Positions 22,264 through 51,511 of a stretch of DNA of 64,000 nt are shown here, one piece after another (position 1 is the first letter of the stretch; every line of letters starts with the position of its first letter). The DNA is from Monocercomonoides exilis PA203. Lineage: Eukaryota > Protista > Preaxostyla. A program made the translations under genes and the position numbers. The notes below the pieces were generated by a model that was given only the letters and a program-made list of their open reading frames with translations, was not told the DNA's origin and did no database searches. The stretch lies in NCBI GenBank assembly GCA_001643675.2, contig LSRY02000057.1:310001-374000 (forward strand), written 5' to 3'.

Positions 22264-22480
22264 AAAACTCTCCAATATTTACAGTTATTGCAAACAGTTA
22301 TGGGATTATTAATTTTCAAATAATAATATGGAGCAATTGATCAATTTTCAATTGTTGCATTTTCTCGAAGTATATTTGATTTTTTTGAAGTTTTAAAATT
22401 TATATTGAGGTTTTTATCGAGATATATTTCATAGAAAAGGATTTTGTTGAATTTTAACTTGCAGTTAGTGCTTATCAAAA

Positions 22481-23365: not shown

Positions 23366-23396
<31 letters not shown>

Positions 23397-35258: not shown

Positions 35259-38200
35259 TCATACAGGTTTTAAAAGAAAATAAATCGTTTTTAGAATGGC
35301 TCGATGCAAACAACGAATGGTTGGAACAAAATGGTTATTCAAACAAGAATTTGTTTGCGACGCGCATGAAGAAGTGAACTCCTTCATCGTAACTCGTGGG
35401 TTAGATAACACAGATTTATCATTTACAGGTAATTCAATTTGAACAGAAAAGTTTTTTACAGATTTTTCACTCGAAGGATGCGATGAACACAAATTCTTTC
35501 CAGGAGATAAAAGAGATGTGGCTGCAACATCGTCTTCCAACTCCCAATCGTCTGGCCAAATGAGAAAGTTGAGGAATGAAGGAAGAGAAAACCGAGTAGA
35601 AGAAAGCAAATCTGGTGCAATAGAATTCAGAAGAGAAGGCGAGATTGGCAGAGACATAACAAACAGATGGTCGATAAAGGAGATTAACTGACTGACGTCC
35701 TTCTCTAACAGTCTTTCAGTTGCCATGCTTAAGTCTTTGTCCAAAGAAAACAGAGATGTTTGACTCTCGTTGAAGCTTGTTTGAGTAAGTAACGCACTGA
35801 TAGGTCGTGGAGGAACAGGAGATGCTCTGTGTGTAAAAGATGAGCAGCTCGAGGAAGAAGGCAAAGAAGACGCGGTTTCAGAACTTAATGATAACACTGT
35901 TGCAGGTGAAAGAGGGCGCGGTGGTGGAGGAAGGGGAGGAAGAGAAGCAGAGCTGCTTGATTTCGGCATTGACGAAGGATAAGGCGAGATTGAAGGCGAA
36001 GGTGAAGAAGATAAAGACTTAATCGAATCATTGCTGTAATCAGAATGAGAGATCTTAAAATCAGGTGAGACAGAACTGGAAGGTGGAAGAGGCAGTTCTG
36101 TAAGAAGGCTACGTGAGCTTTCTCCCTCACTTTGAGATGTGGAAAATGAGCGTGTTGATATCATCGATTGAGGCTCGGATAACTTTGCCGAAGAAAACTT
36201 AACGGTCTTCTGTTTTTCTATTTGATGCTTCTTTTTGGATTCGCCTTCAGTTTCAATTGCATTTTCTTTGAGACGAGGCATCAGAAGTGGCCGAGCTCTG
36301 TAAAATCCACCCAATTTGGCGAGTGGAGTGTAAAGAGAAGATAAAGAGTTCGTCAATGTGTAGTTCAGAGGATTAATAGTGAAAAATATTGAAGAAGGAA
36401 ATACAGCTTGATGAGCTATGGAAGGTACGGAGCATTCGTGGAGATAAAGAAGAGCTGTGCAAATATCGAGTGCGATCTTGAGAATAACAACAGGCGAAAT
36501 GAAAAGTTGGAAAGGCGATTCGTCGAAGTCTGAGTCAGCAAACAAACTGGGCTTCATTTCTCCAGCTGAAATGTGCCTTTTGCGTGGCAAAGGCAAAGAA
36601 TGGTGACTTTCTTGTGGAAATGAAGCAAGTGGATGAGGAAGCAGATGTTTGAAATAACGAACTCGAAACTGTTGATCATCACCAGAAAAATGCAGGAGCT
36701 TTTTCGCTTTTTTCGTTGAAGCCTGCTGCATTTCTGTCAGCTGAGACAGAAAAGCGTTGCACGAAAGAGCATATCTTTCAACATTGACATGAATTGAAGG
36801 AAGAGCTCGCACAGCAGAAGAATGAAGAATACACGGATGAGATAGAGTTGATTGAAAGAAGGCTGCTGATAAGTAATCTTGCAAGGAAATTGTGCTTCTA
36901 TCGCACATACTAATTCCAGCCAACCGAACAGTTAGCCCAACTCTACGAGACAAAAGAGCCAAGTAATGACTGTTAACTTTTGGAGATTTCACAGAAGTTT
37001 TTAAAGGAGTAGAAGTTACAGCTTCATAACTTGGCAAATTTTGGATGTTTAGGCATGGAGATGATGGAGTATTATCAGATAAATTTGATCCAGAATCTTC
37101 GATATTTTGTTCAGTGAAAGTTTCGTATTGAGAAAGCAAAGGAGACATTGAGCATGAACGAGATGAACTGCGCATTTTATGCAAATCTAAATGAGGAAGG
37201 TAGCACACAATGAAAGAAGGAAGCTCCATTGGATTCGGTTCTTCTTGCTTTTGGTCCACAGCAAATGGATCAAAGAGAAGAAAAGATTTCGAAAACCATT
37301 TTGAGAATGAAGAAAAGAAAGAAAGCATCTGGCCATGCTTCGATTTAGCAAAATTCTTTTGGTGTGTCAAGCATGGATTATATGCAGCTTCCTTTAAAGA
37401 ATAAATATTGTCTGACACTTGTAAAGATTCGCTATTTCTACTTGAAAGATGAGCTTGGCCACTTTCCTCTTTGAGTATTGCGTTTGCATCTTCCGATGCT
37501 TTCATTGAATGATCAGCATCTAATGACATTGTGCTTACAAAAGAATTATTAACTTTTTCATCAATTGAAGCGAATTGTTCAGAAACTTCAATTAACTTCC
37601 ACCATTTCAACAGTTCTGAGATTGTTAAGAATGAGTCAAAAGATGAACCAAGTGTCATTTCAGGAGCAGCAGTGTGCAGCAGACTCAAAAGGTTTTGTAA
37701 CCGATTGCTCGTGAGTTTTGAGGAAATGCAATATGAGTGATATTTCTCTCTCACATAGCGCATAACATCTATTAAAGGAGAGCATGATATTAAACGCAGA
37801 GTATCTGAGTTGTGGTCTGTTTTTGTGAAAATAAATGGAAGTCTCGAAAAAGGCAAAGAATGAATTGTTTCCCAATCAGGATATTGATGAGAAGGAAGAA
37901 TTTTTAATCTTCTATTATTTTCTGTGTTTTTCTGTGGTTTTGATTCGAGATCATCATCCGCATCTGCATCATTACGAATAAAGTCGAATGACAGATCAAT
38001 TTCTTTTGGAAGATCTGGCAACGATGATTTATTTAATGCAACGTTACACAAAGAATAAAATGTTGCTTCGCCTTCAGAGTTAGTTGAATCTTCATTTACT
38101 GGAGGGATACAAATGTTGGGCTGTACAGTCATGCAACAGAATTCCGCCGTTCCATCAGACTTATTTTTGTCTTTAGAACTTGTCAACTTTGAAAGAAGAC

Positions 38201-41200
38201 ATCTCACAGTATTGCAAAGCACAACAAGCACCATGTCTACAAAATGTGGATGATGGCCTGCAACAGTTATATTCACAATTTGTGCTTTTTCTTCTGAAGG
38301 AAGTCGACACTTTTGATTACATTCAATCAGAAATGTTAAATCAAATGGAACAACAATTTTCTGCTCGGATTGTTTATCAACTTCGTTTTGCAATGAAGCT
38401 GCTTCAATGTCTCCCAAATTTTTTATGTTTTGAGAAAATGAATCAATATTTTTTGAATTTCGTTTGTAATTAACTTTTCCATCTGCAGAAACAAAACATT
38501 TGTTTGTTTTGGATTTATTCAGTAAACGTGACATCGCCTTGATCAATGGGAAATATCGAGTGTACTTTTTCTCCATTTCAGAAGGAATTTCTATCAAATT
38601 GTCAGCATCTTTCTCCTTTTTAGTTTTTTGCTTTTTTGCCATTTTCTCAGATTTTTCTTGCCTCTTTTCTTTCTTTTTCTTTTCATGCTTCTTTGAACGG
38701 GAACGTTTTAAATCTTTCAATGACGAATCTCCTTTAACATCCACAAATTCTAACGTCCTCTCAGAAATGGTTGCTAAGTTCTTGCTGTTTAAGCTGATTG
38801 GTAAAAATGATTTGAATCCTCCAATGACTCCACCACAGTTAGATGGCTCATGAGATGAGGCTTTCCAAGGAACAATAAACGAGACTGCTGGTTGAATTCC
38901 GTTCAGATTTTCTTCTTCACACTTATCTTTGAAAGTGGCAATTTGTTTATTCAATTTTGATTCTGCTGTTCTAACAAATGATGTAAGTGATGGAAGCAAA
39001 GTCGAAATAATTGCAGACACATCAGCGGACGTAATGAAAATTCGTGAGCGACTTTCAACTTTCAGTCCAAAAGCATAAGAAAAATTATGACAAGGCTTTA
39101 CGATTGAAGGAGAAACAGTAGTTGAATTTTCAGAATTCAATTCTGAAGGATTTGCTGGTGAAACTTCTGTTTTGTATATATTTGTTTCATCTTTGTTTTC
39201 TTTAAGAAGAAAATCAGTATCTTTCACAAGAGAACACGACGGCCACAGGCAATTATATGAAGCATCTTGTGGCTTTAAGCCCAGATGAGCATAAAGCCAC
39301 AAAGGATACGAATGTGCCTCTGAGACAGTTGAAGACAAATTATCGATAAAGTCGTGAGCATGCTGACAATTATCAGCACCTTCATTACACATCTTATTTA
39401 CATCTCCAAATATTTGTCTTTCAACAAACTGCCTCAGATAAGCGAATGCCAACACAAGCACATTATTTGAGTTTGCCAGTCCATCATCTTCACACAAATA
39501 CTTCTTCATATGTTTTTGTGATTTATCATCGGTATAATACAACTTATCTGCTGCAAAGAGGTAATTTAAGATCCACATAGAATCGACAACGACTTGAGAC
39601 TGAATAGTGCCTTTGAGCTCTGATTGCTTCAAATCAGTAATTGAATGCTGAATCAAAAAAGAATGAAGTGATGAAGGAATTGTCAAACGAGGAAGATATG
39701 CGAAGATTCCCCAAGTACTCATCGATCGAATAAAGCTATGCAATGAAGAGTTTTTGATGCCATAGGAGCTCGCCAACTTTTTGAACTCGGAATATGAATA
39801 GCATATTTGAAGCCCATGTAACAGCAATGGGATAATCTTTGCATCTTCTGTCACTTCTGTTGCCAGTTTTTTCTTTTTCTGCGGATAGCACAGTTCCATA
39901 AACTTTAACATTGTTTGTATCATGTTGATCTGCTCTTCACTATGCTCAAGCGCAGAGCTTCTTTCCCAAAGTTCGTTCCACAGTGAAATATGAGATGGCT
40001 CAAGAAATTGTGCGGTGGCAGGAAGTGAAAATGTTGAAAGCAGACGATGCAGCGAGTATAGAAACACATTTGCTCCAAATGGCTCTGATGCAATTGGCTT
40101 CAAAGCACAGCATTCTTCTGACTCTTGTTGCTGCATTGAATCTGGCTGCATCTGAAGTGCTTTTTCCACAGCTTGATCTGTTGAGTTGCTGACCTCTCGA
40201 AGCTTGTCATTTGCGTTCTTTGGATGCTTTTTTGAGGAAGAGGAAGTTTGCTTCTCATGAATGACAACCCAAAAAGGATGATGGAAAACATCTTGAAATT
40301 CTGACTGGCACAACTTTGCAAAAGAAACATTTGTATGTTCATTAAACTCAGAATGAGAAACAGAATGATCGTCAGAAGCTGAACTCGAGGGCACCTGTTT
40401 TGTAACTGCTTCGAACACTTCCTCCATTGAGCCATACTCATCCATCAAATCCGGCCCGACATCCATCGATTCTGTTCTGTGCAAATCGGATGGATGAAAT
40501 GAAAGCACACTGCTGATAATCTGTGGTGTCTTCTCTCTTGCTTTCTGCAGCTTCTTTTCTCTCACCGCTGCCTGAAACGCCAGCAGTGGAGGTGGACCTG
40601 CAACAAATTGAATGGAACCGCATGAAGCACATTTCATGGACGGCTTAGTTCGATCCATCGTTTCATTTTGGCAATGCAATTTTTTATTTTCTTCGGTTAG
40701 TGAAACATTATCACTGCAAGTTAAGCGTCTTCCTGCAAATGAACCTTGGAACAAAGGAAGATTGCCTGTGAACAGAAAATCTTTTTGGTTTTCGCTTTCT
40801 TCTGAAATCCTGCAACATTTTGTAGAATATTGTTTCTTGTATGACTTACTCAAAAAACCTGAGCAAACTGTTGGGTGCAAAGAACGAGGAGGAGCATAAG
40901 AGAAATTATTGTTGCGATTAAACTCAACGATTGGAGAAGGTGAATTTGTTCCTTGTGGAAAAGAGGCAGAATTCAATGAATTTTGTTCCATATTTGTAAA
41001 GTGAGATAGAGAATTAGAAACAGAAGAAGGACGAAGTTGATCAGATGCAACAGTTGGGTGATATGAGGCAGATGCAGATGAAGTACGAGGATGCAACGGA
41101 GGTGATGGGATTGGAGAGAGCCGAGGAGATGGAATTGGAAGGTGTGGTGGCGTTGGAATATGCTGTTGAGAAAATGGAGGAGAAGGTTCAGAAGATACCT

Positions 41201-44200
41201 GCAAAGAAAGCGAGTCTAATGAATCAAGCAAAGCTGGTTGAAATTCTGGTGGAATTGGCGAGGAAACTGGATTAAGCGGAGGAGAAGTTGCAGATCGGGT
41301 TGATGAAGGATAAGATTGCGTTGTTCCATTTTCAGAAAATGTATTCTTTTGTGTCGTGTTCATTTTTCCAAATCCGTTTGGAAAAGAACTAAGAATTTGT
41401 AATGAATCCTGAAAAGTTTGAATGCCTGCAAGAGATGTTGCTGATCCTAATGATTTATGTGTGAATTTGCTGATATGATGGTAATTATTGTTGGTATCAT
41501 GGCTCATAAACGATTTATCCGAATTGTGCGAATTCTGTTCGAAAGAGGACATTTGCTGAGAATTTAGTGTTTCTCTGCTTAAGGTGTCCTGAAGCAATCT
41601 CGAGCTAACTGGGGTGTTATCCTTTACTTGCTCTGTTGAATTATCCAATTTTGATTGATTATGGCTCTTCTTCAGTGTCTCCATCGGAGCATATAAAAGA
41701 AGTTCTCCATCGTTGCAAATTGTGTCTGTCCACTCAGAAATACAAGCAACAATCGCTTCAGTCATCTGTGCAACCTTTTCATTAACAGTTATTGAAGATG
41801 ATGTTTCATCCTTTTTCGTAACCATCACCAGTCCTTTATCAGAACCAGATGATTTTTCTTTATTGGTTTCAAAGTTTGCATTGTTGCCTCCTTCTGTTTG
41901 TCTCTCGTTTGTTATGCTTTTATTTTCATTTTCGACGTTGTACCAACTTTGAGAAATGAGCACAGCATCATCTTGAATCCCTTGAGGCGGGCGTGCTTCG
42001 GATGCATCAACATCACATTCAGCAACTTCAGTGCTTTTTGAAGGGCTCACAACTTCATCAGGATTTAGCTTGCTCTCATTTTTGCTGCTGCCGACAATGT
42101 CAAATTTCTGCTGCACATCAGACTCAACTGTTGTGTAACTTCTCTCCATTTCAGTGCTTTTGCTCATAAAATACACATTTCTGTCTTCAACTTCTGAAAC
42201 CCAAAATGATGAAGGCAAATTGATTTCATCCTCCTCCTTTTCTTTATCAACAGTTATCATCATTATATTCTTGTTCTCTATCAACTCTTCTTTCATCAGA
42301 TGCCCCTGGAGCTGAACATAATCAAGATCATCGACAGGAGAAAGATGCTTCACCATTTTATGCTCCGCGATTTCTCTTTTTGAAAATGGAACTTTTGAAT
42401 TACTTGAAACAGGCAGTGAAAGAGGTCGAGTGATTTCTGTTTTTCTTCTTTTCTCAAAGCTTCGGGTGTGCTCGGTTTCAATTTGCATTGTATAAGATCT
42501 GATAGGCTGAGGAGGATGAAGAGTGCTTAATTCATTCGCTTCAGAAGATAAATGATCTTCAGACATAACAACATTGATGATCAAATAAACAATAAATCGG
42601 ATGCCAAATGCCAGGGCAATTTCATGCAAACTGTTCAATGTTGCAAAAAGAGAGCAGACAAATGACTGAGGAAGAGAGGCCTTTGGAGCATTTCCAATTG
42701 CGCATCTAGTTGAGTCTGAAAAAGTCAGCTGATCAAAAGAAAGAGAAAGAGAAAGCAAAATTGGAGTCGGAAATGTGCTTATAGTCGAAGGAAATAAAGC
42801 AGTTTGTTCAGATGTTTGAACGAATGAGCGAAAAGAAAGGCAGAGCCAAAAAAGGCGAGAAAATGAAAGAGAAGAAGGGATGTGGAGAATATGAGTGTGC
42901 TGTCCAGGAAGAGGATTGTTGAATAGCGTGAATGTCTCAACTGAAGAATTATGAGATGATGCCAAAACAATTGGTTTTGCATCATCTTCATTCGAAAGAC
43001 TAACGTTGTTGTCGGGTGTCGCAACTTTGTTGAAAGCGTCGTTGAATGTGCTCTGAGACAACGCACTGAAAAGCGCTGATGACAACGGAGAATGCGAAGA
43101 ATTACGAGAAAAACCGTTTGTTTTGCCTTCGTCCGATAATGCAATCACCCGAATGAACGAAAGAGGAGAAGGGGTGATAGGCAACGGATGATCGATTGCA
43201 TCGGATGATGGCTCTGCCTTTCTCTTCATCTCAACAGCTGTTATTACTTCTGCAACAATTGGTGCTAAAGATATTTCTGAAGGGGAACGAGCCATTCCAT
43301 CGCAAACAGAGAACTCTAAAGGCGAAGCAGAGTGAAAAGCTTTCCAAAGAGCAGAAGTGCTGATCATCTTCAATATCTTTTCTGATGTTGTGTGTATCCA
43401 CTCATCCAGCGCCTCTTCTTGCGACGCTCTCAAAATGAACAGCGGAGGAGGATTGAAATTTTGTAAAATTGACACAAAATGATTTGGAGAAGAATTAGTT
43501 TCAGAATTTGTTTGAACAGTGTTTGGTTCAGACGTTGCTAACAATTGCCGTTCAACGTCTCGAAAAAACACAGAGCCAGAAGCAGAAACAAGCATTTTTT
43601 GTAGAATTGAGTTAAGTTGCGAGGAAGCCTTCGCAATGTAGCTTGCGATTGGTGGAGCAGGGAATGAGGATGCCAAGAGCAACTGATGTGTCATCCGCAG
43701 AACAGTCAAAAATGTGTCTGGCAGCATCAGATTCACATGAAACGGAGGGCAGATGTGCTGAAAAGGTGATAATGAACTTGAAGCAGGCATTGGAATGGCT
43801 TCAATGTATTTCAAGAAGAAACGTTTGAAAGGTCTGTACTGTTTAGACAGATGGCGAGATCCAAATGTGAAAGATTGTTTTGCTTCAGAGCGGTGGTTGG
43901 TTTGTGAATAAGACGAACGAGAAACAATTTCTGATGAATTTTTATCGAAAATTTGGTAAGTAGAGTTTAACTGAAGAGACGCTGTTGAAGCTGAAGAAGA
44001 AGAATCAGTCGAAGTACTCGACGATGAAGACATCCTCTTCAGCTTCTTACGCGGCAATGTATTCGCCTGACTATCCAATAACTCGCTTGCTTTCACTGGC
44101 TCATCGATCTTCTTTTCAGAGGCAGTTGCAGAATTAGTCGATGCTGTTCGAGCCAGCCGCGAATTCTTGCGCTGCAGCTGATATTGTGCGTATCTCTCGC

Positions 44201-47200
44201 TTTTCTGCGCCTTTTTGCGGGCTTCTTTGTAGTTCTTTGAGATCTCTTTCAGTTCCTTTTCCACTTGCGCCTTCAGATCTTTGGCATATGACTGGATGCT
44301 CAGCAGCTTAATCTCAGATGCCAAGCGAAGAAGCGGATCTTTCGGATGAATCAAACTGAAAGAAGAGGATGATGCAATCTTGGATGTTGCCCTTGTGGAT
44401 GCGTTGTTGACAGAGACAAGAAGAGAAAGCGAAGGAAGCCTTGTGATAGAGCCAGGAACCGACCTCAAAAAAGGATTGAATGACAGGTTCAGAAACTTCA
44501 GGTGCTCAAACTGGCAAATCGAGGATGGAACAGTTGTTAGTGCATTATGAGACAAATCGAGATATTCGAGTGTGTTAATCAGGCGTGACTCTGACGAAAG
44601 GGCTGTAGAAGCAATCAATTGAGATAGCTGGTTCGATGTGAGTGCACATCCTCTCAATGAGAGATGAGTCAGTGAAAGAGATGACAAAAAGTCAATTGGT
44701 GAGAAAATAGAAAGCGACAGAGGTTTTTCAGAGTTTATCAGTTCATCTTGTTCTAACTCAATGTCACCACTTTGCTTTGAAAAACTAAGCAGATTCATCA
44801 GATGAGCACAAGGGAGAGCCGCCTTCATCATTCTTGAGAGTGGAATTGTTGAGTAATGCAGATCAAGAACATTACAGTCTGCAAGAAGATGCTGAAGCAT
44901 TTCTGAAGTATCAGAGGAAATTGATAGTAGGGCTTCGTGGATAGACAATGAATGCTTTTGATTAGTATGAATTCCGTTTGGCCTCTGTGATTGCATCAGC
45001 GCTTCAGCCAAACTTGAAGGAGAATTCATTGTTGAAGGCAACAGTTCAGATGAGACAAAGCATTTTGTTATAAATTTTGCATAGCTCAAATGGACGTGGA
45101 TGATTTTCGCCAGATCAATTGTGTGGAATAAGAGAGGAAGTGTGCAAACAGCAACGTTTTGAAGGAAATTATCCATCTGAAGCATATCCAAAGCAGATTG
45201 TGTTACTTGAATAATTATAGGCGAACGTGGTAAATCTGGCATTTCTATGCACTGAAGATTAATATATCGTTCATAATGAGATGTGATACTCTTCATTCTT
45301 TGAACCTTCACTTCATTTGATGATTCCTCTGAGAATGCTTTCTCATCAGACAAGAATGAAAGCAACCGCAGTGTCACAATGCCCATTCGAATGAACAGCG
45401 ATGGAGGAACACAGAGCATCGCGCAAATCGACTCCAGCTGGTCTTTTTCTGTTATCGGATCGATTTTCTTGTCTGAAGCAATCATCCGCATCAGAATCAT
45501 TGCTGCTTTCGAGTCGTCGTTTTCTCGCACTTTCTCTCTTTCGGTCAAAACCTGCTTCCATTCGCCTGCTTTGACTTCGTCGCAAAGCAGCTCTGTGAAA
45601 AAGATTGATGACTCGAAAACTGCTGGGATTGATAGAAAAACTGTCTCAGAATTCAATTCTGTCTCATTCGAGGCGGTTTCATTCCAATCAATTGTATCCT
45701 TTTCCTCACAAACTTCTGCAACTGTTCCTTCAGCCTCAACATTTGTGAGAGCATCCGTCCATTTCTCAACAAGAGCCACAAGCGCTTCTGTTTCAGGCAT
45801 CTCCCACATTCTCTCTCCTATTCTGTATGGATCAGACCCTCTTCGCAGCATCCGCAGGACATGAAACACAGAAAAGACATGTTGAAAGGGGGATAAATCT
45901 GAGTGGGTGTGTTTTTCATACAGAGAATGAACCTCAACATGATTGGGTGAAGAAGCATCCTGCTCGTCCTCTTCTTTCTGACTCTGTTTGGTCCGTTTCG
46001 AATGCGACGAGGAAGAATACGAATGAGACGGGGGAGCACTCAGAAGATGAGCAAGTGCTGCATCACTCTCTGCAAAGATGCTCTGAACAGAACGCGACAA
46101 AAGCACCGAGTGAAGGAGAAGACAAGGCAGCGATGATAACACAGCATCAGCTGCGCCAAACAGACAGGAATGGAAGAAGCGCCGGGCTTCTGTTCGGAGT
46201 GAGGCACAGGCTGTTACCAAAGAGAGGATGTATTTGTTCTTGTTTGGATGAAGGGTGGTTAAATCAGGTGAAGCAGAATCCGATAAAGACAGATCAGAAG
46301 TGTCATTCTGTCGCAATCTCTGGATCAGATCGGCAGTTGCTTCAAAAAGAAGCACAACTCTTTTATCTTTCTTTTCTCCTTCGCTTTTTTCGCCTTCTAC
46401 CAAAACATCATTACTCTCAACATTTTGAGTATTTGCATCAAAACGCTCACTCAAATTTACCAGAGCAGTGTCAATGCCAGCCTCAGGTGGAATATCACAG
46501 CCCATAAAGAGGAGAAGCACTGCAGCCGCAGCGTCTTCGATGAGGAGTGCATGAACAAGAGGATGGCTGCTCAGAAAGAGAACAGGCTTCGGCGGCGACT
46601 GCAGGGCAGAAGTGGCTGCGGAGGCTGGGTGGATGCCTGGGAGAGAAGGGCTTGGGGCCTTTCCAGGTGAGGAGAAGATAATCTGAGAGGAGGAAATATC
46701 GCGTTTGATGCTTTTGCGTGTGGAGGGCTGGACTGTCGTGCCTCGCCGAGAAGAAGAAAAAGAAGAAGGGGGAGGAGGAGTGAAGGACAGTTGAGGCACT
46801 TGAGACTGGACAGAAATAGAAGCACTGGAAGCATTGCGTGAATGAGCTGTCTCTCTCAGATAGGACGAAGAGAAAGAAGGAAAATCTGAACGGCTGGATG
46901 ACTCACTCACATCAACCAGCGGGGCTGCCTCGTGAAAGGGGCAGATGGTCTGCGATCTGCTTTTCTTCATTGGAGCTGACGAAGTCTGCGGAGGCTGCTT
47001 GAGAGAAGCAAACTGGGCAGGGTATTTGTTCAGCGAAGAGAGCAAGTTGATTGAGGGAGACAGCTCATCTGTGCCTGTCTGCTGTGCCAGTGTTTGTGTG
47101 AGAAGGAGAGAGAGAGAAATGACTGGCAGAAAAAACGAGTCAGTGATGATTGCCTGGCCCGAACAGGAGCCAGCCAACGGAAGCTGAGGGGAAGCAGTGG

Positions 47201-50200
47201 AGGATAGAGGAGGTTGGAGCGAGGTGTGGGAAAGCGAGCTGTGAAGTGTGCTGTTTCTGTTCTGAACGCCCCAGGGATGTGAAGAAGAAGAAGAAGAAGA
47301 AGTTCCAGTTGGAGAGAGAGGAGCAGATGGAGCAAAAGAAGAGGCATTGTTTGAAGAATTACGAGAAGATTCGGCTGATTCGTGTGTTGGATAGCTGTAG
47401 AGGGTGCCAAACAAAGTGTTGGTGCCTGTTTTCAAGGGAGAAGACAGAGAGATTTCGCGATGGCTCAAAAGAAGACGGAGAAGGGAAAGGTTTCCGGACT
47501 GAACAGCTGCCAGAATGGGAGTGGAATTAGCAGAGAGAGTTAAAGTGGATGTGGATGTGGATGAAGAAGAAGAAGGTGATGATGAAGGTGATAATGAATT
47601 AGCAGCATTTGAATGAGCAAGAGAAAAAGAAGAAGCTGAAGAAGAAGATGAGGTTGGTGAAGAGGTAGGTGATGAAAGTGTTGTGTTGTCTGAAGCAGAA
47701 GAAACCGAAAGAGGAGCAAGTGGCATCAGAGGAGCGATTTGAGAGAGCATTCCAGAGAGAGAAGATGCTGAAAGAGAAGAAGCAGCAGCGGAAGGGTCTG
47801 TGACGTGTGACTCTGGAGACGGTAAGCAAGCATTTGCAGGTGATGAAGAAAAAAGAGGAAGAGAAGGAGAAGAAGATGAAAATGAAGATGAAGAAGAAGA
47901 AGAAGTACCACCAGCATTCGCAGAATTTGGAGAAAGCATGGGAGAGTGTGAAGGCATAGGCGACTGCATCGGATTTGGTGAGCTGTTGCGAGGCGAAGAC
48001 TGAGGAGAGAGCGGAAGATTGGCAGTCAGCAGAGCAGGGGACATGACAGAGGGCGGGGGTGTCGGCACAGCACGTGTGTTTCCCACAGGCTTGTCGATCA
48101 TGTCCATCCAGTTCTTGGTGATGTGGCTGGGAACACACAGGCCCCGCGGAAGAGGAGCCTTGATGGCCTGCGATGTGGCGCAGTTCGGGCTGCAGCCGGC
48201 GTCGAGGAGTAGCTGCACGACAGAAGAATGGCCGCCGCGTGCTGCGCATATCAGCGGCGTTAGCCCTCTTCCGTCGGGGGTGAAGGGGCCTGCCCCGTTG
48301 AGAAGGAGCAGATGCACAAGCGGGACGTGGCCAGCGAGACAGGCGAGCATCAGGGCGTTGAATGAGTGGGTGGAGCGTGTGTGGATGTTCGCACCGCGCA
48401 GAAGGAGCTCATTCGCAGCCTGTACTGCGTGTGAGAGGCAAGCACACATCAGCGGGGTGATGCCATCAGCATCAGTCGACAGCGCATCGATGGACATTCC
48501 ATTCGCCAGGAAGAAGCGGAGCAGGCCGACGTTGTTCTCTTCGGCAGCGATGTGCAGCATCACTCCTTTGTTCCTCCTCTCACAGCCAAACATCTCCAGT
48601 CTCGTCAGATTCGGGCAGTGGCGCGCAAGCAGACGGATAGACTCGTCGCCGATGAGCTCGCAGTCTTCCAGCGAAAGCGACTCGAGACAAGGGCAGCTAA
48701 CAGCGAGGGCAGCCACAGCAGCGTCCGTCAGGGAAGAGCAGCTCTTCAGCTTCAGCTTCTTCAGAGTGGGGCAAGAGGAGGCAAGAGAGGCGATGAAGGA
48801 GTCGGTGACTCCGGTGCAGAAGGAGAGGTTGAGTGATGTGATGGGAGGAAGAACTGGTTTGGTTGATGGAATGCAAATGGAAGGCTGTGGAGATGATGAG
48901 GAAGAGGAAGAGGAAGAGGCAGAGGAAGAGGTAGATGCAGAGATGGAATAAGAAGTAACTGATGATGGTAGTGATGATGAAGGTGGAGGAGGAGAAGGAG
49001 TTGGAAGAGGCTCCGGAAAGTCGGCTGGCATTGGGTATGTTGGAGAAACAGATGGGGAATGAGTAGGTGTGTGGTACATTGCAGACTCGTCAGCCTGTGG
49101 AAGGGCAGGCGGAGGAGGCACAACGCTTGATGGATATAGTGCTGCTGGTACTGGCGGGGGAGATATTGGCTTCTGAGAAGCTAACGATGTCGATGGCAAA
49201 ACAGATGTTGCTGCTGACTGGTTCTCCATCGACAGGTCAAGGCACCTCAGATCCAAAGCAGACAGAGACTTGCAGTTGCTGCTGAGTGCTGAGATGCCTT
49301 CGTGGGTGATTTGAGAGCACCATCCGATCTTCAGCACTTGCAGATGCTTCAGGCCGACAACTGCGCTTGCTGGTGCAGACGGCATGGGCGGAGGAGGAAG
49401 AGGCGGTGTTCCAGAGAGTGACAGCGCAATAACAGAGGAATCTTCTTCGTTTTTGAGAGTCGATTCGAAATGTGTATTAGATGGTGTTGGAATGCCAGTG
49501 AATGTCTTTGCTTCGTCATGAGATTTTTGCGACTGGGAAACACCGAGTTGATAAACAGAGTTCTTTGAAATATTTTCTCGGTCTTCTTGTTCTATTAATC
49601 CATCTCTTAATTTATCGTGTTGCTTTCCAATTACAAAAAGCGACATATTTGTTAACTTTGTGCAGCCTATTAGATTTAGCTTTTTAATTCCATGGCAATG
49701 AGCTGCAAGTGATAAGATAGAAATATCAGTAAGTTGACTTAATCCTCGTAAAGAAACATTTTCCAAAAAGGGTTGGCTCTCAAAAAACGTGGTGATTGCT
49801 CTATCAGTTAATTCACAAGCTCCATAAAAGGATATAGAAATTAGTTTTGGACAAAGTGTTGATAATAAAATCACTGTTGAATCATCAATAGTATCTCTTA
49901 ATAGAGAAAGATCAAGATGTCTGAGCGAAGAAAACGATGGCTGCTTTAAAGGAATAAAACCAATTGAAGAAATGTTTGTTTGTCTCAATGAGAGTGAAGA
50001 TATATTTGTAAGTTGAGAGAGCGGAAAAACAGCTTCGTTACTTATTGGACATAAATTCAAAGAAAGTGAAGTAAGGCATTTATTTCTTGATAAAAGTTCG
50101 GAAATAATACTGTCATTTACTTCCTCTAAGCCATCAAGGATAATTTCTTCAAGTTGTGTAAAATTTGATACAATTGCACGTAAATCGTCTGTAGAAAGAT

Positions 50201-50426
50201 GTATATTATGTGCTAAATTTAATGTTTTAAGGTTTTTCGATTGAATACAAAGTTTCACTGTTTTTTCTCTCTTTAATCTTAATAATGAAAAATCTAAAAT
50301 TGTGGTGTAAATACGAAGTGCATCTCGAAAATTTCTGCTCACCAGCATAAGAGACAATCTTGATTCAATTCCGCATCTGGATAAAATTGCACCAAGCACT
50401 TCGTGCGGAATAGAATTAAGATTCAT
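35259..50426 (-). CDS. Giant multidomain protein: F-box, FBXL-type LRRs, ankyrin repeats, second LRR block, ROC/COR-like region, C-terminal pseudokinase (Roco/LRRK-like)
   Basis: Single ~15.2-kb ORF (first ATG 50426). F-box 'LNSIPHEVLGAILSRC...LMLVSRNF'; LRRs 'LKLKSCSSLTDAAV'; ankyrins 'TPLMCAC', 'TPLICAARGGHSSVVQLLLDAG'; LRRs 'LDLSHNALTTVPSSICQFEHLKFLNLSFN'; COR-like 'EFKKLASSYGI...LHSFIRSMSTWGIFAYL...VVVDSMWI'; kinase 'LSHPCIL', 'LKIALDICTALLYLHE...IAHQAV', 'AKLGGF'. Confidence 0.8.
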   Translation of the reverse strand: MNLNSIPHEVLGAILSRCGIESRLSLMLVSRNFRDALRIYTTILDFSLLRLKREKTVKLCIQSKNLKTLNLAHNIHLSTDDLRAIVSNFTQLEEIILDGLEEVNDSIISELLSRNKCLTSLSLNLCPISNEAVFPLSQLTNISSLSLRQTNISSIGFIPLKQPSFSSLRHLDLSLLRDTIDDSTVILLSTLCPKLISISFYGACELTDRAITTFFESQPFLENVSLRGLSQLTDISILSLAAHCHGIKKLNLIGCTKLTNMSLFVIGKQHDKLRDGLIEQEDRENISKNSVYQLGVSQSQKSHDEAKTFTGIPTPSNTHFESTLKNEEDSSVIALSLSGTPPLPPPPMPSAPASAVVGLKHLQVLKIGWCSQITHEGISALSSNCKSLSALDLRCLDLSMENQSAATSVLPSTSLASQKPISPPPVPAALYPSSVVPPPPALPQADESAMYHTPTHSPSVSPTYPMPADFPEPLPTPSPPPPSSSLPSSVTSYSISASTSSSASSSSSSSSSPQPSICIPSTKPVLPPITSLNLSFCTGVTDSFIASLASSCPTLKKLKLKSCSSLTDAAVAALAVSCPCLESLSLEDCELIGDESIRLLARHCPNLTRLEMFGCERRNKGVMLHIAAEENNVGLLRFFLANGMSIDALSTDADGITPLMCACLSHAVQAANELLLRGANIHTRSTHSFNALMLACLAGHVPLVHLLLLNGAGPFTPDGRGLTPLICAARGGHSSVVQLLLDAGCSPNCATSQAIKAPLPRGLCVPSHITKNWMDMIDKPVGNTRAVPTPPPSVMSPALLTANLPLSPQSSPRNSSPNPMQSPMPSHSPMLSPNSANAGGTSSSSSSSFSSSSPSLPLFSSSPANACLPSPESHVTDPSAAASSLSASSLSGMLSQIAPLMPLAPLSVSSASDNTTLSSPTSSPTSSSSSASSFSLAHSNAANSLSPSSSPSSSSSTSTSTLTLSANSTPILAAVQSGNLSLLRLLLSHREISLSSPLKTGTNTLFGTLYSYPTHESAESSRNSSNNASSFAPSAPLSPTGTSSSSSSSHPWGVQNRNSTLHSSLSHTSLQPPLSSTASPQLPLAGSCSGQAIITDSFFLPVISLSLLLTQTLAQQTGTDELSPSINLLSSLNKYPAQFASLKQPPQTSSAPMKKSRSQTICPFHEAAPLVDVSESSSRSDFPSFSSSYLRETAHSRNASSASISVQSQVPQLSFTPPPPSSFSSSRRGTTVQPSTRKSIKRDISSSQIIFSSPGKAPSPSLPGIHPASAATSALQSPPKPVLFLSSHPLVHALLIEDAAAAVLLLFMGCDIPPEAGIDTALVNLSERFDANTQNVESNDVLVEGEKSEGEKKDKRVVLLFEATADLIQRLRQNDTSDLSLSDSASPDLTTLHPNKNKYILSLVTACASLRTEARRFFHSCLFGAADAVLSSLPCLLLHSVLLSRSVQSIFAESDAALAHLLSAPPSHSYSSSSHSKRTKQSQKEEDEQDASSPNHVEVHSLYEKHTHSDLSPFQHVFSVFHVLRMLRRGSDPYRIGERMWEMPETEALVALVEKWTDALTNVEAEGTVAEVCEEKDTIDWNETASNETELNSETVFLSIPAVFESSIFFTELLCDEVKAGEWKQVLTEREKVRENDDSKAAMILMRMIASDKKIDPITEKDQLESICAMLCVPPSLFIRMGIVTLRLLSFLSDEKAFSEESSNEVKVQRMKSITSHYERYINLQCIEMPDLPRSPIIIQVTQSALDMLQMDNFLQNVAVCTLPLLFHTIDLAKIIHVHLSYAKFITKCFVSSELLPSTMNSPSSLAEALMQSQRPNGIHTNQKHSLSIHEALLSISSDTSEMLQHLLADCNVLDLHYSTIPLSRMMKAALPCAHLMNLLSFSKQSGDIELEQDELINSEKPLSLSIFSPIDFLSSLSLTHLSLRGCALTSNQLSQLIASTALSSESRLINTLEYLDLSHNALTTVPSSICQFEHLKFLNLSFNPFLRSVPGSITRLPSLSLLVSVNNASTRATSKIASSSSFSLIHPKDPLLRLASEIKLLSIQSYAKDLKAQVEKELKEISKNYKEARKKAQKSERYAQYQLQRKNSRLARTASTNSATASEKKIDEPVKASELLDSQANTLPRKKLKRMSSSSSTSTDSSSSASTASLQLNSTYQIFDKNSSEIVSRSSYSQTNHRSEAKQSFTFGSRHLSKQYRPFKRFFLKYIEAIPMPASSSLSPFQHICPPFHVNLMLPDTFLTVLRMTHQLLLASSFPAPPIASYIAKASSQLNSILQKMLVSASGSVFFRDVERQLLATSEPNTVQTNSETNSSPNHFVSILQNFNPPPLFILRASQEEALDEWIHTTSEKILKMISTSALWKAFHSASPLEFSVCDGMARSPSEISLAPIVAEVITAVEMKRKAEPSSDAIDHPLPITPSPLSFIRVIALSDEGKTNGFSRNSSHSPLSSALFSALSQSTFNDAFNKVATPDNNVSLSNEDDAKPIVLASSHNSSVETFTLFNNPLPGQHTHILHIPSSLSFSRLFWLCLSFRSFVQTSEQTALFPSTISTFPTPILLSLSLSFDQLTFSDSTRCAIGNAPKASLPQSFVCSLFATLNSLHEIALAFGIRFIVYLIINVVMSEDHLSSEANELSTLHPPQPIRSYTMQIETEHTRSFEKRRKTEITRPLSLPVSSNSKVPFSKREIAEHKMVKHLSPVDDLDYVQLQGHLMKEELIENKNIMMITVDKEKEEDEINLPSSFWVSEVEDRNVYFMSKSTEMERSYTTVESDVQQKFDIVGSSKNESKLNPDEVVSPSKSTEVAECDVDASEARPPQGIQDDAVLISQSWYNVENENKSITNERQTEGGNNANFETNKEKSSGSDKGLVMVTKKDETSSSITVNEKVAQMTEAIVACISEWTDTICNDGELLLYAPMETLKKSHNQSKLDNSTEQVKDNTPVSSRLLQDTLSRETLNSQQMSSFEQNSHNSDKSFMSHDTNNNYHHISKFTHKSLGSATSLAGIQTFQDSLQILSSFPNGFGKMNTTQKNTFSENGTTQSYPSSTRSATSPPLNPVSSPIPPEFQPALLDSLDSLSLQVSSEPSPPFSQQHIPTPPHLPIPSPRLSPIPSPPLHPRTSSASASYHPTVASDQLRPSSVSNSLSHFTNMEQNSLNSASFPQGTNSPSPIVEFNRNNNFSYAPPRSLHPTVCSGFLSKSYKKQYSTKCCRISEESENQKDFLFTGNLPLFQGSFAGRRLTCSDNVSLTEENKKLHCQNETMDRTKPSMKCASCGSIQFVAGPPPLLAFQAAVREKKLQKAREKTPQIISSVLSFHPSDLHRTESMDVGPDLMDEYGSMEEVFEAVTKQVPSSSASDDHSVSHSEFNEHTNVSFAKLCQSEFQDVFHHPFWVVIHEKQTSSSSKKHPKNANDKLREVSNSTDQAVEKALQMQPDSMQQQESEECCALKPIASEPFGANVFLYSLHRLLSTFSLPATAQFLEPSHISLWNELWERSSALEHSEEQINMIQTMLKFMELCYPQKKKKLATEVTEDAKIIPLLLHGLQICYSYSEFKKLASSYGIKNSSLHSFIRSMSTWGIFAYLPRLTIPSSLHSFLIQHSITDLKQSELKGTIQSQVVVDSMWILNYLFAADKLYYTDDKSQKHMKKYLCEDDGLANSNNVLVLAFAYLRQFVERQIFGDVNKMCNEGADNCQHAHDFIDNLSSTVSEAHSYPLWLYAHLGLKPQDASYNCLWPSCSLVKDTDFLLKENKDETNIYKTEVSPANPSELNSENSTTVSPSIVKPCHNFSYAFGLKVESRSRIFITSADVSAIISTLLPSLTSFVRTAESKLNKQIATFKDKCEEENLNGIQPAVSFIVPWKASSHEPSNCGGVIGGFKSFLPISLNSKNLATISERTLEFVDVKGDSSLKDLKRSRSKKHEKKKKEKRQEKSEKMAKKQKTKKEKDADNLIEIPSEMEKKYTRYFPLIKAMSRLLNKSKTNKCFVSADGKVNYKRNSKNIDSFSQNIKNLGDIEAASLQNEVDKQSEQKIVVPFDLTFLIECNQKCRLPSEEKAQIVNITVAGHHPHFVDMVLVVLCNTVRCLLSKLTSSKDKNKSDGTAEFCCMTVQPNICIPPVNEDSTNSEGEATFYSLCNVALNKSSLPDLPKEIDLSFDFIRNDADADDDLESKPQKNTENNRRLKILPSHQYPDWETIHSLPFSRLPFIFTKTDHNSDTLRLISCSPLIDVMRYVREKYHSYCISSKLTSNRLQNLLSLLHTAAPEMTLGSSFDSFLTISELLKWWKLIEVSEQFASIDEKVNNSFVSTMSLDADHSMKASEDANAILKEESGQAHLSSRNSESLQVSDNIYSLKEAAYNPCLTHQKNFAKSKHGQMLSFFSSFSKWFSKSFLLFDPFAVDQKQEEPNPMELPSFIVCYLPHLDLHKMRSSSRSCSMSPLLSQYETFTEQNIEDSGSNLSDNTPSSPCLNIQNLPSYEAVTSTPLKTSVKSPKVNSHYLALLSRRVGLTVRLAGISMCDRSTISLQDYLSAAFFQSTLSHPCILHSSAVRALPSIHVNVERYALSCNAFLSQLTEMQQASTKKAKKLLHFSGDDQQFRVRYFKHLLPHPLASFPQESHHSLPLPRKRHISAGEMKPSLFADSDFDESPFQLFISPVVILKIALDICTALLYLHECSVPSIAHQAVFPSSIFFTINPLNYTLTNSLSSLYTPLAKLGGFYRARPLLMPRLKENAIETEGESKKKHQIEKQKTVKFSSAKLSEPQSMISTRSFSTSQSEGESSRSLLTELPLPPSSSVSPDFKISHSDYSNDSIKSLSSSPSPSISPYPSSMPKSSSSASLPPLPPPPRPLSPATVLSLSSETASSLPSSSSCSSFTHRASPVPPRPISALLTQTSFNESQTSLFSLDKDLSMATERLLEKDVSQLISFIDHLFVMSLPISPSLLNSIAPDLLSSTRFSLPSFLNFLIWPDDWELEDDVAATSLLSPGKNLCSSHPSSEKSVKNFSVQIELPVNDKSVLSNPRVTMKEFTSSCASQTNSCLNNHFVPTIRCLHRAILKTIYFLLKPV

Positions 50427-50718
50427 CTCCAATTAATTTTCACAAATTACAGTTATTGTTATGGCCAGATCAAACATTTTCGGTTAAATATGATACAGTA
50501 TTCGTCAGAAAAAGAGATTGTGTTCATGTTCATTTCGTTTTTTTGCTGGAATAATTATTGTGCAAAAAATTCTCCTCGAAATATCTATCGAAAACAATAT
50601 ATCTTTGTCAAAAAAATAAAGGGATAAGATACGTTGGAAAAGCAAAATACTATTTGAAGTTATTCGTAAAAGTTATTTGTTTAAAATGATAAATGAATAT
50701 TATGACATATCGCATGCG

Positions 50719-51393
50719 ATGTCTCAGCGAAAATGCCCTCCTGAACCATGTGGAAGCATTGAATTAATAATTGGACCAATGTTCAGTGGAAAGACTACTG
50801 AATTGATAAGACGAATTCGTAGGCATTCCTTAGCAAAAAGAAATTGTATTGTTATCAAATACTCAAAGGATCGCAGATATTCGGAAGATAAACTTTGCAC
50901 GCACGACCATTTTACATATGAGGCAATCTCATGTATTAAACTGAAAGATATTGAAGATTTAGTGAAAGATGCCGAAATAATAGGAATAGATGAAGGACAA
51001 TTTTATCCAGATTTAGTGGAATTTTGTGAAATGCAAGCGAATTCTGGAAAAATTGTAATTGTTGCAGCTCTTGATGGAACATTTCAAAGAAAACGATTTA
51101 ATGATGTTGTTGATCTAATTCCGTTATGCGAATCAGTTGAAAAACTCAATGCGGTCTGTACAGTTTGCGGAAGAGCTGCTGCATTTACAAAGAGACTTGT
51201 TGATGACGATTCAATTGAACTTGTTGGAGGAGCTGAAGTGTACACTGCATTATGCAGAAAATGCTTCTTTGAATTTGATGAAAAAATGAATGAGCAGATG
51301 AAGGGATCGAATTTTTTGAGTTCTTCACCGGAATGCAAAACAAATGATTTATCACCTCCTTCATCACCTCCGACTTCACCAGATTCATCATAA
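50719..51393 (+). CDS. TK1: Thymidine kinase (TK1/type II family)
   Basis: P-loop 'GPMFSGKTTEL', 'IGIDEGQF', 'AALDGTFQRK', Zn/lasso 'CTVC...IELVGGAEVYTALCRKC'. Start is ATG 50719 or the upstream in-frame ATG at 50686. Confidence 0.95.
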   Translation: MSQRKCPPEPCGSIELIIGPMFSGKTTELIRRIRRHSLAKRNCIVIKYSKDRRYSEDKLCTHDHFTYEAISCIKLKDIEDLVKDAEIIGIDEGQFYPDLVEFCEMQANSGKIVIVAALDGTFQRKRFNDVVDLIPLCESVEKLNAVCTVCGRAAAFTKRLVDDDSIELVGGAEVYTALCRKCFFEFDEKMNEQMKGSNFLSSSPECKTNDLSPPSSPPTSPDSS

Positions 51394-51511
51394 AAAGAAC
51401 ATTAAGGTTATATTTATTTAAAAAAAGAGGTTAGCATTGAAAAATGGATTAACCTTCATTTCGCTTTTTATAGTTTTTGTTTTATATGTTTGTTATATTC
51501 TTTTTTGATTT

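What the first reader, a model, noticed from the sequence alone, without database searches (positions are those of the whole stretch)
35259..50426. Giant F-box-bearing Roco/LRRK-like protein with apparently dead GTPase and kinase: a possible SCF-coupled signalling scaffold
Seen: one intronless ~5055-aa ORF. It carries an N-terminal F-box (~50300-50420), Cys-type LRRs (~48580-50250), four tandem ankyrins (~48170-48570) and two more ankyrin-like units displaced by Ser/Pro inserts (~47460-47525, ~46500-46566). A second LRR block (~44400-44690) is followed by ROC-like relics ('IRVIALSDEGKT' ~43115-43155, 'LPGQHTH' ~42900), a COR-like segment (~39570-39810) and a kinase C-lobe in which HRD reads HQA and DFG reads GFY (~36290-36480). 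Established: ANK-LRR-ROC-COR-kinase is the domain order of LRRK/Roco proteins, and F-box+LRR is the SCF substrate-receptor module. Inference: an FBXL module is fused to a Roco protein whose catalytic sites have decayed, which could couple a pseudo-GTPase/pseudokinase scaffold directly to ubiquitination. I know of no described Roco protein with an F-box, but I cannot search to confirm that. The ROC assignment is the weakest part.
Basis: partly seen in the sequence, partly recalled or inferred. Interest (0 to 1): 0.85.

Follow-up and report, generated by a model that had tools for sequence, protein, structure and literature searches.

The report
Giant F-box protein with dead kinase
This is a real, expressed 5055-residue gene of the oxymonad Monocercomonoides exilis that joins a ubiquitin-ligase adaptor head (F-box, leucine-rich repeats, ankyrins) to a catalytically dead kinase-like tail; it has two even larger sister genes, but its proposed identity as an LRRK/Roco GTPase-kinase could not be shown.

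Summary
One uninterrupted 5055-codon ORF lies on the minus strand (ATG 50426, stop 35259-35261). Pfam confirms an F-box, Cys-type LRRs, four ankyrins and a second LRR block.

New here:
- The organism is Monocercomonoides exilis. The deposited NCBI model (4773 aa) lacks the F-box.
- Two colinear giant paralogues exist in the same genome (5772 and 7368 aa). No relative was found anywhere else.
- The C-terminal kinase relic is statistically supported: hhalign 92.7%, E 4e-7, and all 17 PDB profile hits are kinases. The catalytic residues that can be aligned are missing in all three genes, so it is an old, conserved pseudokinase.
- The F-box is predicted to dock on a Skp1-like protein of the same genome (ipSAE 0.78, best control 0.00).
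- RNA contigs cover the F-box continuously with the downstream repeats.

The Roco reading is not established. The "GKT" P-loop string is private to this copy, and no ROC signal appears in Pfam, hhalign or ESM features. Only a sub-threshold COR-A match exists (Pfam 14.4 bits against a cut-off of 35.3; hhalign 14-39%). AlphaFold models were too poor to test the folds.

Verdict: a lineage-specific giant F-box/LRR/ANK pseudokinase family. Roco ancestry is possible (about 0.3) but unproven.

The parts
35259..50426 (-). Whole coding sequence, 5055 aa plus stop, no intron seen
   Evidence: Searches show an open frame. RNA contigs lie without difference or real joint on 45600-50159 and reach 50431-50443. 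NCBI model P0001 equals residues p263-5031.
50298..50417 (-). F-box (annotated span p6-45; Pfam match p6-40)
   Evidence: Pfam PF00646 scores 25.8 bits against a cut-off of 20.5. It is conserved in both paralogues. The predicted Skp1-like interface uses residues 1-34.
48573..50255 (-). Cys-type (FBXL-like) leucine-rich repeats in three runs (p60-290, p360-400, p531-620) split by Ser/Pro-rich inserts
   Evidence: Pfam LRR_6 43.7 bits and LRR_4. Identity to the paralogues is 45-65%.
48153..48572 (-). Four tandem ankyrin repeats (p621-760)
   Evidence: Pfam Ank_2 E 1.1e-22 and Ank E 1.1e-20. Identity to the paralogues is 52-65%.
45261..45923 (-). Conserved helical block of unknown kind (p1504-1724)
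   Evidence: BLASTP gives 33% identity to C5 and shorter matches to C9. No Pfam family.
44403..44705 (-). Second, ordinary-type LRR block (p1910-2010)
   Evidence: Pfam LRR_8 27.2 bits and LRR_1 26 bits. In the exhaustive phmmer search all 149 listed hits other than the gene's own model lie on this block, and 29 of them are LRR-Roc-COR proteins.
42513..43223 (-).
   Evidence: Identity to the paralogues is 31-40%. It is found only in the three giants. No Roc signal. AF2 pLDDT 43.7.
38781..40772 (-). Conserved block 7 (p3221-3884), kind unknown; contains the COR-A-like stretch
   Evidence: Identity to the paralogues is 24-27% over about 660 aa. It is found only in the three giants.
39807..40022 (-). 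Weak COR-A-like stretch (p3471-3542; ...ELCY... IIPLLL)
   Evidence: Pfam COR-A E 0.036, 14.4 bits against a cut-off of 35.3. hhalign gives 13.8-39%, E 2e-3 to 3e-4, and 0 of 120 column shuffles reach the score. Local HMM 3.3 bits.
37581..38582 (-). Conserved block 8 (p3951-4284), kind unknown
   Evidence: Identity to the paralogues is 22-23%. No Pfam family.
36282..36971 (-). Kinase-like domain core, alphaC to DFG position, catalytically dead (p4488-4717)
   Evidence: hhalign against 14 M. exilis kinases gives 92.7%, E 4.4e-7, with controls <=0.2%. The PDB profile search returns 17 of 17 kinases, the best being the NFR5 pseudokinase at E 0.0013. ESM features 0.92 to kinase clusters. HRD reads HQA/HHS/HHA and DFG reads GGF in all three genes.
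35553..35720 (-). Conserved helical block after a long Ser/Pro insert (p4905-4960), possibly the rest of the kinase C-lobe
   Evidence: Conserved in the three paralogues. hhalign places it on alphaF but without support (0.03%).
35262..35336 (-). Conserved amphipathic C-terminal helix (p5033-5057)
   Evidence: Conserved at the very end of all three ORFs. The NCBI model splices it out.

Best explanation
The gene encodes one of three lineage-specific giant F-box proteins of Monocercomonoides exilis.

Anatomy:
- The N-terminal F-box with Cys-type LRRs is an FBXL-style module that docks on Skp1, and so on a cullin-RING ligase.
- Behind it sit ankyrins, a second LRR block, several conserved blocks of unknown fold and a TKL/RLK-Pelle-like kinase domain.
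- These parts are strung out on long Ser/Pro-rich disordered linkers.

The kinase domain lost its catalytic residues before the three genes diverged, yet it has been kept since. It most likely serves as a binding or allosteric module, not as an enzyme.

The likeliest working mode is a very large SCF substrate receptor or scaffold. The repeat domains and the pseudokinase would recruit partners for ubiquitination.

Shown: the domain content, the paralogy, expression of the 5' part, and loss of the alignable catalytic residues. Model-supported only: Skp1 docking. Inferred: ligase function and scaffold role.
For: - Architecture: Pfam finds F-box, LRR_6, Ank and LRR_8, and the same set in the paralogues.
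- Paralogy: the ORFs at C5 (5780 codons) and C9 (7368 aa) are colinear in 9-11 blocks. The N-terminal module, block 5 and block 7 occur only in these three genes.
- Kinase-like domain: hhalign 92.7%, E 4.4e-7, with cross-controls <=0.2%. All 17 PDB profile hits are kinases, led by plant pseudokinases and RLKs and MLK4. ESM features point to kinase clusters at 0.92.
- Dead site: HRD Asp, catalytic Asn, DFG Asp and alphaC Glu are replaced in all three genes. No Gly-rich loop is evident, and the strand that would carry the VAIK Lys could not be aligned to kinases.
- SCF context: Skp1 and cullins are present in the genome. The predicted complex of the F-box with an intronless Skp1-like protein scores ipSAE 0.78 against 0.00 for the best of 3 controls. 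Contacts agree in at least 88% and partner pLDDT is at least 81. The mark was reached by 51 of 78 solved complexes and 2 of 108 mismatched pairs. The interface uses Skp1 residues 93-151 and F-box residues 1-34.
- Expression: RNA contigs of 4.5-6.6 kb lie on 45600-50159, short ones end at 50431-50443, and there is a hole at 50444-50641.
Against: - No biochemical evidence of any kind.
- The complex prediction may score high from memory of solved Skp1/F-box structures.
- About 45% of the protein is low-complexity, and four conserved blocks (about 1500 aa) have no assigned fold, so the main function may lie in parts I could not read.
- Pfam's own kinase models do not reach E<=10 on the kinase block.
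- Only 5.9 kb of the 15 kb was checked against RNA.
- No orthologue outside this genome was found, so conservation rests on three paralogues.
Confidence: 0.6

Rival explanations
1. One reading: the middle and C-terminal part is a decayed Roco/LRRK module (LRR-ROC-COR-kinase). Block 5 would be a relic G domain and block 7 a relic COR, fused to an FBXL head.
For: - The order ANK - LRR - block 5 - block 7 - TKL-like kinase matches LRRK.
- The second LRR block matches Roco-type LRRs: 29 of the 149 listed hits other than the gene's own model are LRR-Roc-COR proteins.
- A COR-A end motif sits at the right place in the order: Pfam COR-A E 0.036, hhalign E 3e-4 to 2e-3 with 0 of 120 shuffles reaching it, and a local Roc-COR HMM picks the same stretch.
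- A forced alignment puts the strand FIRVIAL plus loop on the P-loop, and [FY]DTP..GQ (in C5 and C9) on DxxGQ.
Against: - ROC: hhalign 0.1%, E 0.5-0.6. No Roc/Ras/Arf match in Pfam at E<=10 in any paralogue. ESM features give nothing (0.79). The PDB profile search gives nothing. GKT is present in one paralogue only. The DxxG spacing is off by two residues. There is no NKxD, and the block ends after the fifth strand.
- COR: 14.4 bits is far below the 35.3 cut-off. An unrelated giant-virus family (DUF5764) scores the same on the same stretch. C5 and C9 give nothing. The reciprocal HMM shows no enrichment of Roco proteins. There is no COR-B signal.
- The whole genome has no COR-A match.
- Spacing is far from Roco: about 400 aa from LRR to block 5 and about 950 aa from the COR-A-like motif to the kinase.
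Confidence: 0.3
2. The F-box does not make the protein a substrate receptor. Instead it controls the protein's own stability or location, as described for Dictyostelium MEKKalpha (F-box plus WD40 plus kinase), or it acts in a Skp1 complex without a cullin.
For: [quoted passage not shown]
- The same Skp1 docking prediction fits this reading equally well.
Against: The F-box is followed directly by Cys-type LRRs, the classic FBXL receptor arrangement. Nothing here separates the two readings, and they are not exclusive.
Confidence: 0.2
3. An annotation or assembly artefact, or a decaying gene: two neighbouring genes read through in frame, or a pseudogene whose long ORF is kept by chance.
For: - The deposited model starts 262 codons downstream and ends differently.
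- Nearly half of the ORF is low-complexity.
Against: - 5057 codons without a stop in 38% G+C DNA cannot be chance.
- Two paralogues keep the same head-to-tail order in single ORFs, including the F-box and the last helix.
- RNA contigs join the F-box to the LRR/ANK part, and by their lengths they run on to about 43.5 kb.
Confidence: 0.03

Closest known systems
FBXL2/FBXL20-type F-box proteins (SCF substrate receptors)
   Same: An N-terminal F-box is followed at once by Cys-type LRRs. The NCBI name for the deposited model is 'putative F-box and leucine-rich repeat protein 2/20'. It is predicted to dock on Skp1's C-terminal helices.
   Different: FBXL proteins have about 400-700 aa and end after the LRRs. 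This one continues for another 4400 aa with ankyrins, a second LRR block, unknown blocks and a pseudokinase, and its LRR domain is split by Ser/Pro inserts.
LRRK2 / Roco proteins
   Same: The order of ankyrins, LRRs and a C-terminal TKL-like kinase domain. Very large size. A weak COR-A-like motif sits between the LRR and the kinase.
   Different: There is no detectable ROC GTPase and no COR above threshold. The kinase is dead. No WD40. It has an F-box head, and I found no paper describing a Roco protein with an F-box.
Dictyostelium MEKKalpha
   Same: One polypeptide carries both an F-box and a kinase domain (PMC5666861).
   Different: MEKKalpha is described as a MEK kinase (I take it to be catalytically active) with WD40 repeats. 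This protein has LRR and ANK repeats and a dead TKL-like domain, and it is several times larger. No sequence relationship was tested.
Plant RLK/Pelle pseudokinases (NFR5, RKS1) and kinases such as SOBIR1, BRI1 and MLK4
   Same: They are the best PDB matches of the kinase-block profile, over helix alphaE and the catalytic loop. NFR5 and RKS1 are themselves pseudokinases (my own knowledge).
   Different: The match is local (about 35 residues, E 1e-3 at best). There is no receptor architecture. The long insert after the DFG position and the missing Gly-rich loop are not shared.
F-box fusions to ARF-family GTPases
   Same: They show that GTPase or signalling domains are repeatedly fused to F-box domains in protists (PMC8358228).
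   Different: No GTPase domain could be demonstrated here.

Membership tests
Roco proteins | ROC: a Ras-like GTPase domain with G1-G5 motifs | tested here: not met
   No Roc/Ras/Arf match in Pfam at E<=10 in the three block-5 pieces or at E<=1 in the whole protein. hhalign against the Roc-COR and Roc-only profiles gives 0.1%, E 0.47-0.59. ESM features score 0.79 with no family. GKT is not conserved among paralogues. The fold could not be tested (AF2 pLDDT 43.7).
Roco proteins | COR (COR-A plus COR-B) directly after ROC | tested here: inconclusive
   COR-A scores 14.4 bits, E 0.036, below the 35.3 cut-off, in this copy only, with an equal chance-level hit to DUF5764. hhalign gives 13.8-39%. There is no COR-B signal. 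The reciprocal HMM and the PDB profile search are negative. AF2 pLDDT 30.
Roco proteins | Recognisable family members elsewhere in the same genome | tested here: not met
   PF16095 COR-A finds 0 matches in the 82.3 Mb assembly, while the control genome with a known Roco rings.
F-box proteins (FBXL class) | F-box motif at the N-terminus | tested here: met
   PF00646 scores 25.8 bits against a cut-off of 20.5 at p6-40. The C9 paralogue scores 21.4 bits and the C5 paralogue 15.8 bits.
F-box proteins (FBXL class) | Cys-type LRRs following the F-box | tested here: met
   PF13516 LRR_6 scores 43.7 bits against a cut-off of 23.4.
F-box proteins (FBXL class) | Binds Skp1; the SCF partners exist in the organism | tested here: inconclusive
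   In silico only. ipSAE 0.78 against 0.00 for the best of 3 controls, contacts agree in at least 88%, partner pLDDT at least 81, and the interface is the canonical one. The score may come from memory of solved complexes. Skp1 and cullin genes are present. No experiment.
Protein kinase-like superfamily | Colinear core: alphaC, HPN-type strand, alphaE, catalytic loop, DFG strand | tested here: met
   hhalign 92.7%, E 4.4e-7, over 108 columns, with controls <=0.2%. 17 of 17 PDB profile hits are kinases. ESM features 0.92. Pfam's kinase models do not reach E<=10.
Protein kinase-like superfamily | Catalytic residues (VAIK Lys, alphaC Glu, HRD Asp, catalytic Asn, DFG Asp, Gly-rich loop) | tested here: not met
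   HRD reads HQA/HHS/HHA. The catalytic Asn is S/T/A. DFG reads GGF. The alphaC Glu is Gln. These hold in all three paralogues. No Gly-rich loop is evident. The strand that would carry the VAIK Lys lies outside the hhalign-aligned part and could only be read by eye; it shows no Lys. Hence a pseudokinase.
Ankyrin-repeat proteins | Tandem 33-residue ankyrin repeats | tested here: met
   Ank_2 E 1.1e-22, and Ank matches in 3 stretches.

The most novel reading that the evidence does not exclude
The three giants are the first Roco-derived proteins carrying an F-box. An LRR-ROC-COR-kinase module would have lost GTPase and kinase chemistry and now serve purely as a conformational scaffold that feeds partners to an SCF ubiquitin ligase. 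This would be a natural example of a fully 'dead' LRRK-like protein kept under selection.
Probability: 0.3. Interest if true: 0.7.

Novelty: new variant of a known kind. Interest (0 to 1): 0.45.

Why it matters
F-box proteins and pseudokinases are both well known. A 5000-7000-residue protein that joins an FBXL head to ankyrins, LRRs and a conserved dead kinase has not been described in the papers I could search. It has no detectable relative outside Monocercomonoides.

It would give a natural case of a pseudokinase wired directly to the ubiquitin system, in a deeply divergent, mitochondrion-less eukaryote. If the middle blocks prove to be ROC-COR relics, it would also show what an LRRK-type protein does when only its scaffold is left.

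On the practical side, the public gene model misses the F-box and the conserved last helix. The two paralogues did not surface as full-length proteins in the protein collections searched.

Tried and rejected
- Single-sequence phmmer of the kinase, 'ROC' and 'COR' pieces against PDB sequences found nothing useful.
- Word-indexed searches for full-length relatives, over three regions, found only the gene's own NCBI model.
- The one exhaustive phmmer job (p1500-2660) was swamped by generic LRR hits. It showed no orthologue, and I consider it a poor choice of query.
- Two metagenome scans, with the block-5 and kinase-block alignments, found no relative.
- AlphaFold2 on 3-sequence alignments of block 5 (pLDDT 43.7) and of p3215-4300 (pLDDT 30) was unusable. 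I therefore ran no fold search, since matches of such models are meaningless.
- The neighbouring 2535-aa kinase-bearing ORF is not a paralogue.
- hhalign of the post-insert tail block against kinases placed it on alphaF but without support.
- Own-genome searches with protein queries of 1158 aa or more failed technically. Queries of about 250-300 aa worked.
- The canonical Skp1 gene (C11) is split into three exons.
- I considered and rejected a pseudogene or a read-through of two genes (see the rival explanations).
Full report
**The object.** The window holds a single open frame at 35259..50432 on the minus strand: 5057 codons from a TTG, with the first ATG at codon 3 (nt 50426), which gives 5055 aa. 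Below, p stands for the TTG-based residue number. Neighbouring genes are plainly eukaryotic: a ubiquitin E1 in two ORFs, an AMPK beta subunit and a large kinase-bearing ORF. A protein search identifies the gene's own public model, P0001, named 'putative F-box and leucine-rich repeat protein 2/20 [Monocercomonoides exilis]', 4773 aa. That model equals p263-5031 plus a short different end. It therefore lacks the F-box and the first 262 residues, and it splices out the last 26 residues.

**What Pfam confirms.**
- F-box p6-40, 25.8 bits against a cut-off of 20.5.
- Cys-type LRRs, LRR_6 43.7 bits.
- Four ankyrins at p621-760, E 1e-22.
- A second, ordinary-type LRR block at p1954-1993, LRR_8 27.2 bits.

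No Roc, COR or kinase family appears at E<=1.

**Expression.** Four RNA-seq runs of one study hold the stretch. On 45600-51500, contigs of 4.5-6.6 kb lie without a single difference on 45600-50159. The gaps in the table are skipped simple repeats, and the record coordinates run on across them. Short contigs continue to 50431-50443 and stop, followed by a hole at 50444-50641. So the F-box codons are transcribed continuously with the LRR/ANK part, and the 5' UTR is at most about 17 nt. The only joints listed have 22-letter sides inside low-complexity repeats, so no real intron is seen. Only 5.9 kb could be laid in the single call allowed.

**A family of three.**
- An own-genome search with the kinase-like piece found two more giant ORFs: C5:143016-160355 (5780 codons, Met at 9) and C9:578901-601004 (7368 aa).
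- They are colinear with the window's gene in blocks: F-box plus LRR (45-46% identity), LRR plus ANK (52-65%), p1504-1724, the second LRR block, p2223/2404-2666 (31-36%), p2871-2972, p3221-3884 (24-27%), p3951-4284 and p4488-4717 (34%). A helical block at p4905-4960 and an amphipathic helix at the very C-terminus are also shared.
- Pfam sees the same domain set in both paralogues.
- The N-terminal module, block 5 and block 7 occur only in these three genes in the 82-Mb assembly.
- About 56% of the protein lies in conserved blocks. The rest is Ser/Pro-rich filler (16.5% Ser).
- The conserved last helix argues for the ORF's own stop rather than the spliced end of the public model.

**The kinase-like domain is real and dead.**
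- I built a profile of 14 M. exilis kinase domains (loci). Against the three-paralogue alignment of p4470-4760 it gives hhalign probability 92.7%, E 4.4e-7, over 108 columns from alphaC to the DFG strand. The cross-controls (kinase profile against block 5, block 7 and the tail; Roc-COR profile against the kinase block and the tail) all give <=0.2%, E 0.3-0.9.
- A profile of the same block against all PDB sequences returns 17 hits at E<=10. All 17 are protein kinases of the TKL/RLK-Pelle kind. The best is the NFR5 pseudokinase at E 0.0013, followed by SOBIR1, BRI1, BAK1, MLK4 and RKS1.
- ESM features of p4480-5057 point to kinase clusters (0.92/0.91; 8 of the ten best hits that carry a family share a family or clan with the best).
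- In all three paralogues HRD reads HQA/HHS/HHA, the catalytic Asn is S/T/A, DFG reads GGF[YF] and the alphaC Glu is Gln. No Gly-rich loop is evident. The strand that would carry the VAIK Lys lies outside the aligned part and, read by eye, has no Lys.
- The loss therefore predates the triplication, and the dead domain has been kept since.
- Pfam's own kinase models do not reach E<=10 on the isolated block. This shows how far the domain has diverged.

**The ROC claim fails the tests I could run.**
- The P-loop-like string ...ALSDEGKT is private to this copy. C5 reads ..NEGSSCS.. and C9 reads ..DADSLSS.. inside a variable low-complexity loop.
- The conserved motif P[LM].[GS]QH follows [FY]DT in two paralogues. 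It recalls DTAGQ but has two extra residues. There is no NKxD, and conservation stops after what would be the fifth strand.
- hhalign of block 5 against a Roc-COR profile gives 0.09%, E 0.59. That profile was built from 21 LRR-Roc-COR proteins recovered among the LRR hits. Against the Roc part alone E is 0.47. A forced alignment does lay the first strand on the P-loop and the GQ motif on DxxGQ, but without significance.
- Pfam at E<=10, the PDB profile search and ESM features give nothing.

**COR is undecided.**
- The adjacent p3471-3542 (..LW.. ..ELCY.. IIPLLL) matches the end of COR-A in three related tests: a local Roc-COR HMM (3.3 bits, E 0.004 for three sequences), hhalign (13.8%, E 0.002 for the whole block; 39%, E 3e-4 for p3440-3600, with 0 of 120 column shuffles reaching the score) and Pfam COR-A (E 0.036, 14.4 bits against a cut-off of 35.3, profile positions 99-143 of 143).
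- Against it: an unrelated family (DUF5764, mentioned in a giant-virus genome paper, PMC12085832) scores the same on the same stretch. The C5 and C9 pieces give nothing. A reciprocal HMM shows no enrichment of Roco proteins. PDB profile searches find no LRRK2 or Roco. No COR-B signal exists. The whole genome has no COR-A match.
- I put Roco ancestry at about 0.3.

AlphaFold2 on the three-sequence alignments gave mean pLDDT 43.7 (block 5) and 30.0 (p3215-4300). I ran no fold search on such models. Deeper alignments were not obtainable: three word-indexed searches, one exhaustive phmmer job (swamped by LRR hits) and two metagenome scans found no relative outside this genome.

**The SCF side.** The predicted complex of the intronless Skp1-like protein with residues M3-p122 scored ipSAE 0.78 in three runs, against 0.00 for the best of three controls. 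Contacts agreed in at least 88% and the partner's pLDDT was at least 81. The mark was reached by 51 of 78 solved complexes and 2 of 108 mismatched pairs. The interface joins Skp1 residues 93-151 to F-box residues 1-34, the canonical arrangement. The tool warns that such a pass may come from memory of solved Skp1/F-box complexes. It shows likeness, not binding.

**Comparison with what is known.**
- The head is an FBXL-type module.
- An F-box and a kinase in one protein has a precedent in Dictyostelium MEKKalpha (F-box plus WD40; PMC5666861).
- F-box fusions to ARF GTPases are described (PMC8358228).
- I found no paper on an F-box Roco or on this Monocercomonoides family.
Its length equals the C9 paralogue with its stop codon (s1-464285). 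That is the same idea on a sister gene, not independent support.
- Other giant F-box fusions were also noted in this genome (s1-463949, s1-468445). I did not test them.

**Verdict.** This is a real, expressed, lineage-specific family of giant F-box/LRR/ANK proteins ending in a conserved pseudokinase. Its most likely role is as a very large SCF adaptor or scaffold. The Roco label is not earned on present evidence. It is a new variant of known kinds and of moderate interest.

Noticed in passing
window 84-7691 (+): A 2535-aa ORF whose last 140 residues match only the C-lobe of a Tyr/Ser-Thr kinase (PF07714, 29 bits, profile positions 162-256). It also has a hydrophobic, possibly membrane-spanning stretch near residue 2100. 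It is not related to the giant F-box gene by BLASTP.
   Followed up: partly
window 54857-58230 (-): A ubiquitin-activating enzyme E1 is split into two adjacent ORFs (ThiF/FCCH/4HB, then SCCH/UFD), presumably by an intron. It lies 4.4 kb from the F-box gene.
   Followed up: no
window 35259-35342 and about 34965: The public NCBI model of this gene starts at Met263, so it lacks the F-box. It also replaces the conserved C-terminal helix by a 6-residue exon about 370 nt downstream. Conservation in the paralogues favours the unspliced end.
   Followed up: partly
G000:C52:244016, C23:935922, C47:332771, C5:1296186, C28:950606: The genome holds several other open frames of 4200-6900 aa with apparently intact kinase domains. 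Giant kinase genes seem common in this organism.
   Followed up: no
L014:1480-1965 (-) = G000:C36: An intronless 162-aa Skp1-like gene exists beside the three-exon canonical Skp1 on C11. A third, weaker Skp1-like fragment lies on C25.
   Followed up: partly
window 46000-50000: G+C rises to 0.49-0.51 with a strong positive GC skew (0.24-0.35), against about 0.38 elsewhere. This fits the Ser/Pro-rich coding inserts of the minus-strand gene.
   Followed up: no
window 22481-24220 (+) and 21343-22275 (-): An AMPK beta-subunit gene (CBM plus interaction domain) and a Caps_synth/DXD glycosyltransferase-like ORF.
   Followed up: no
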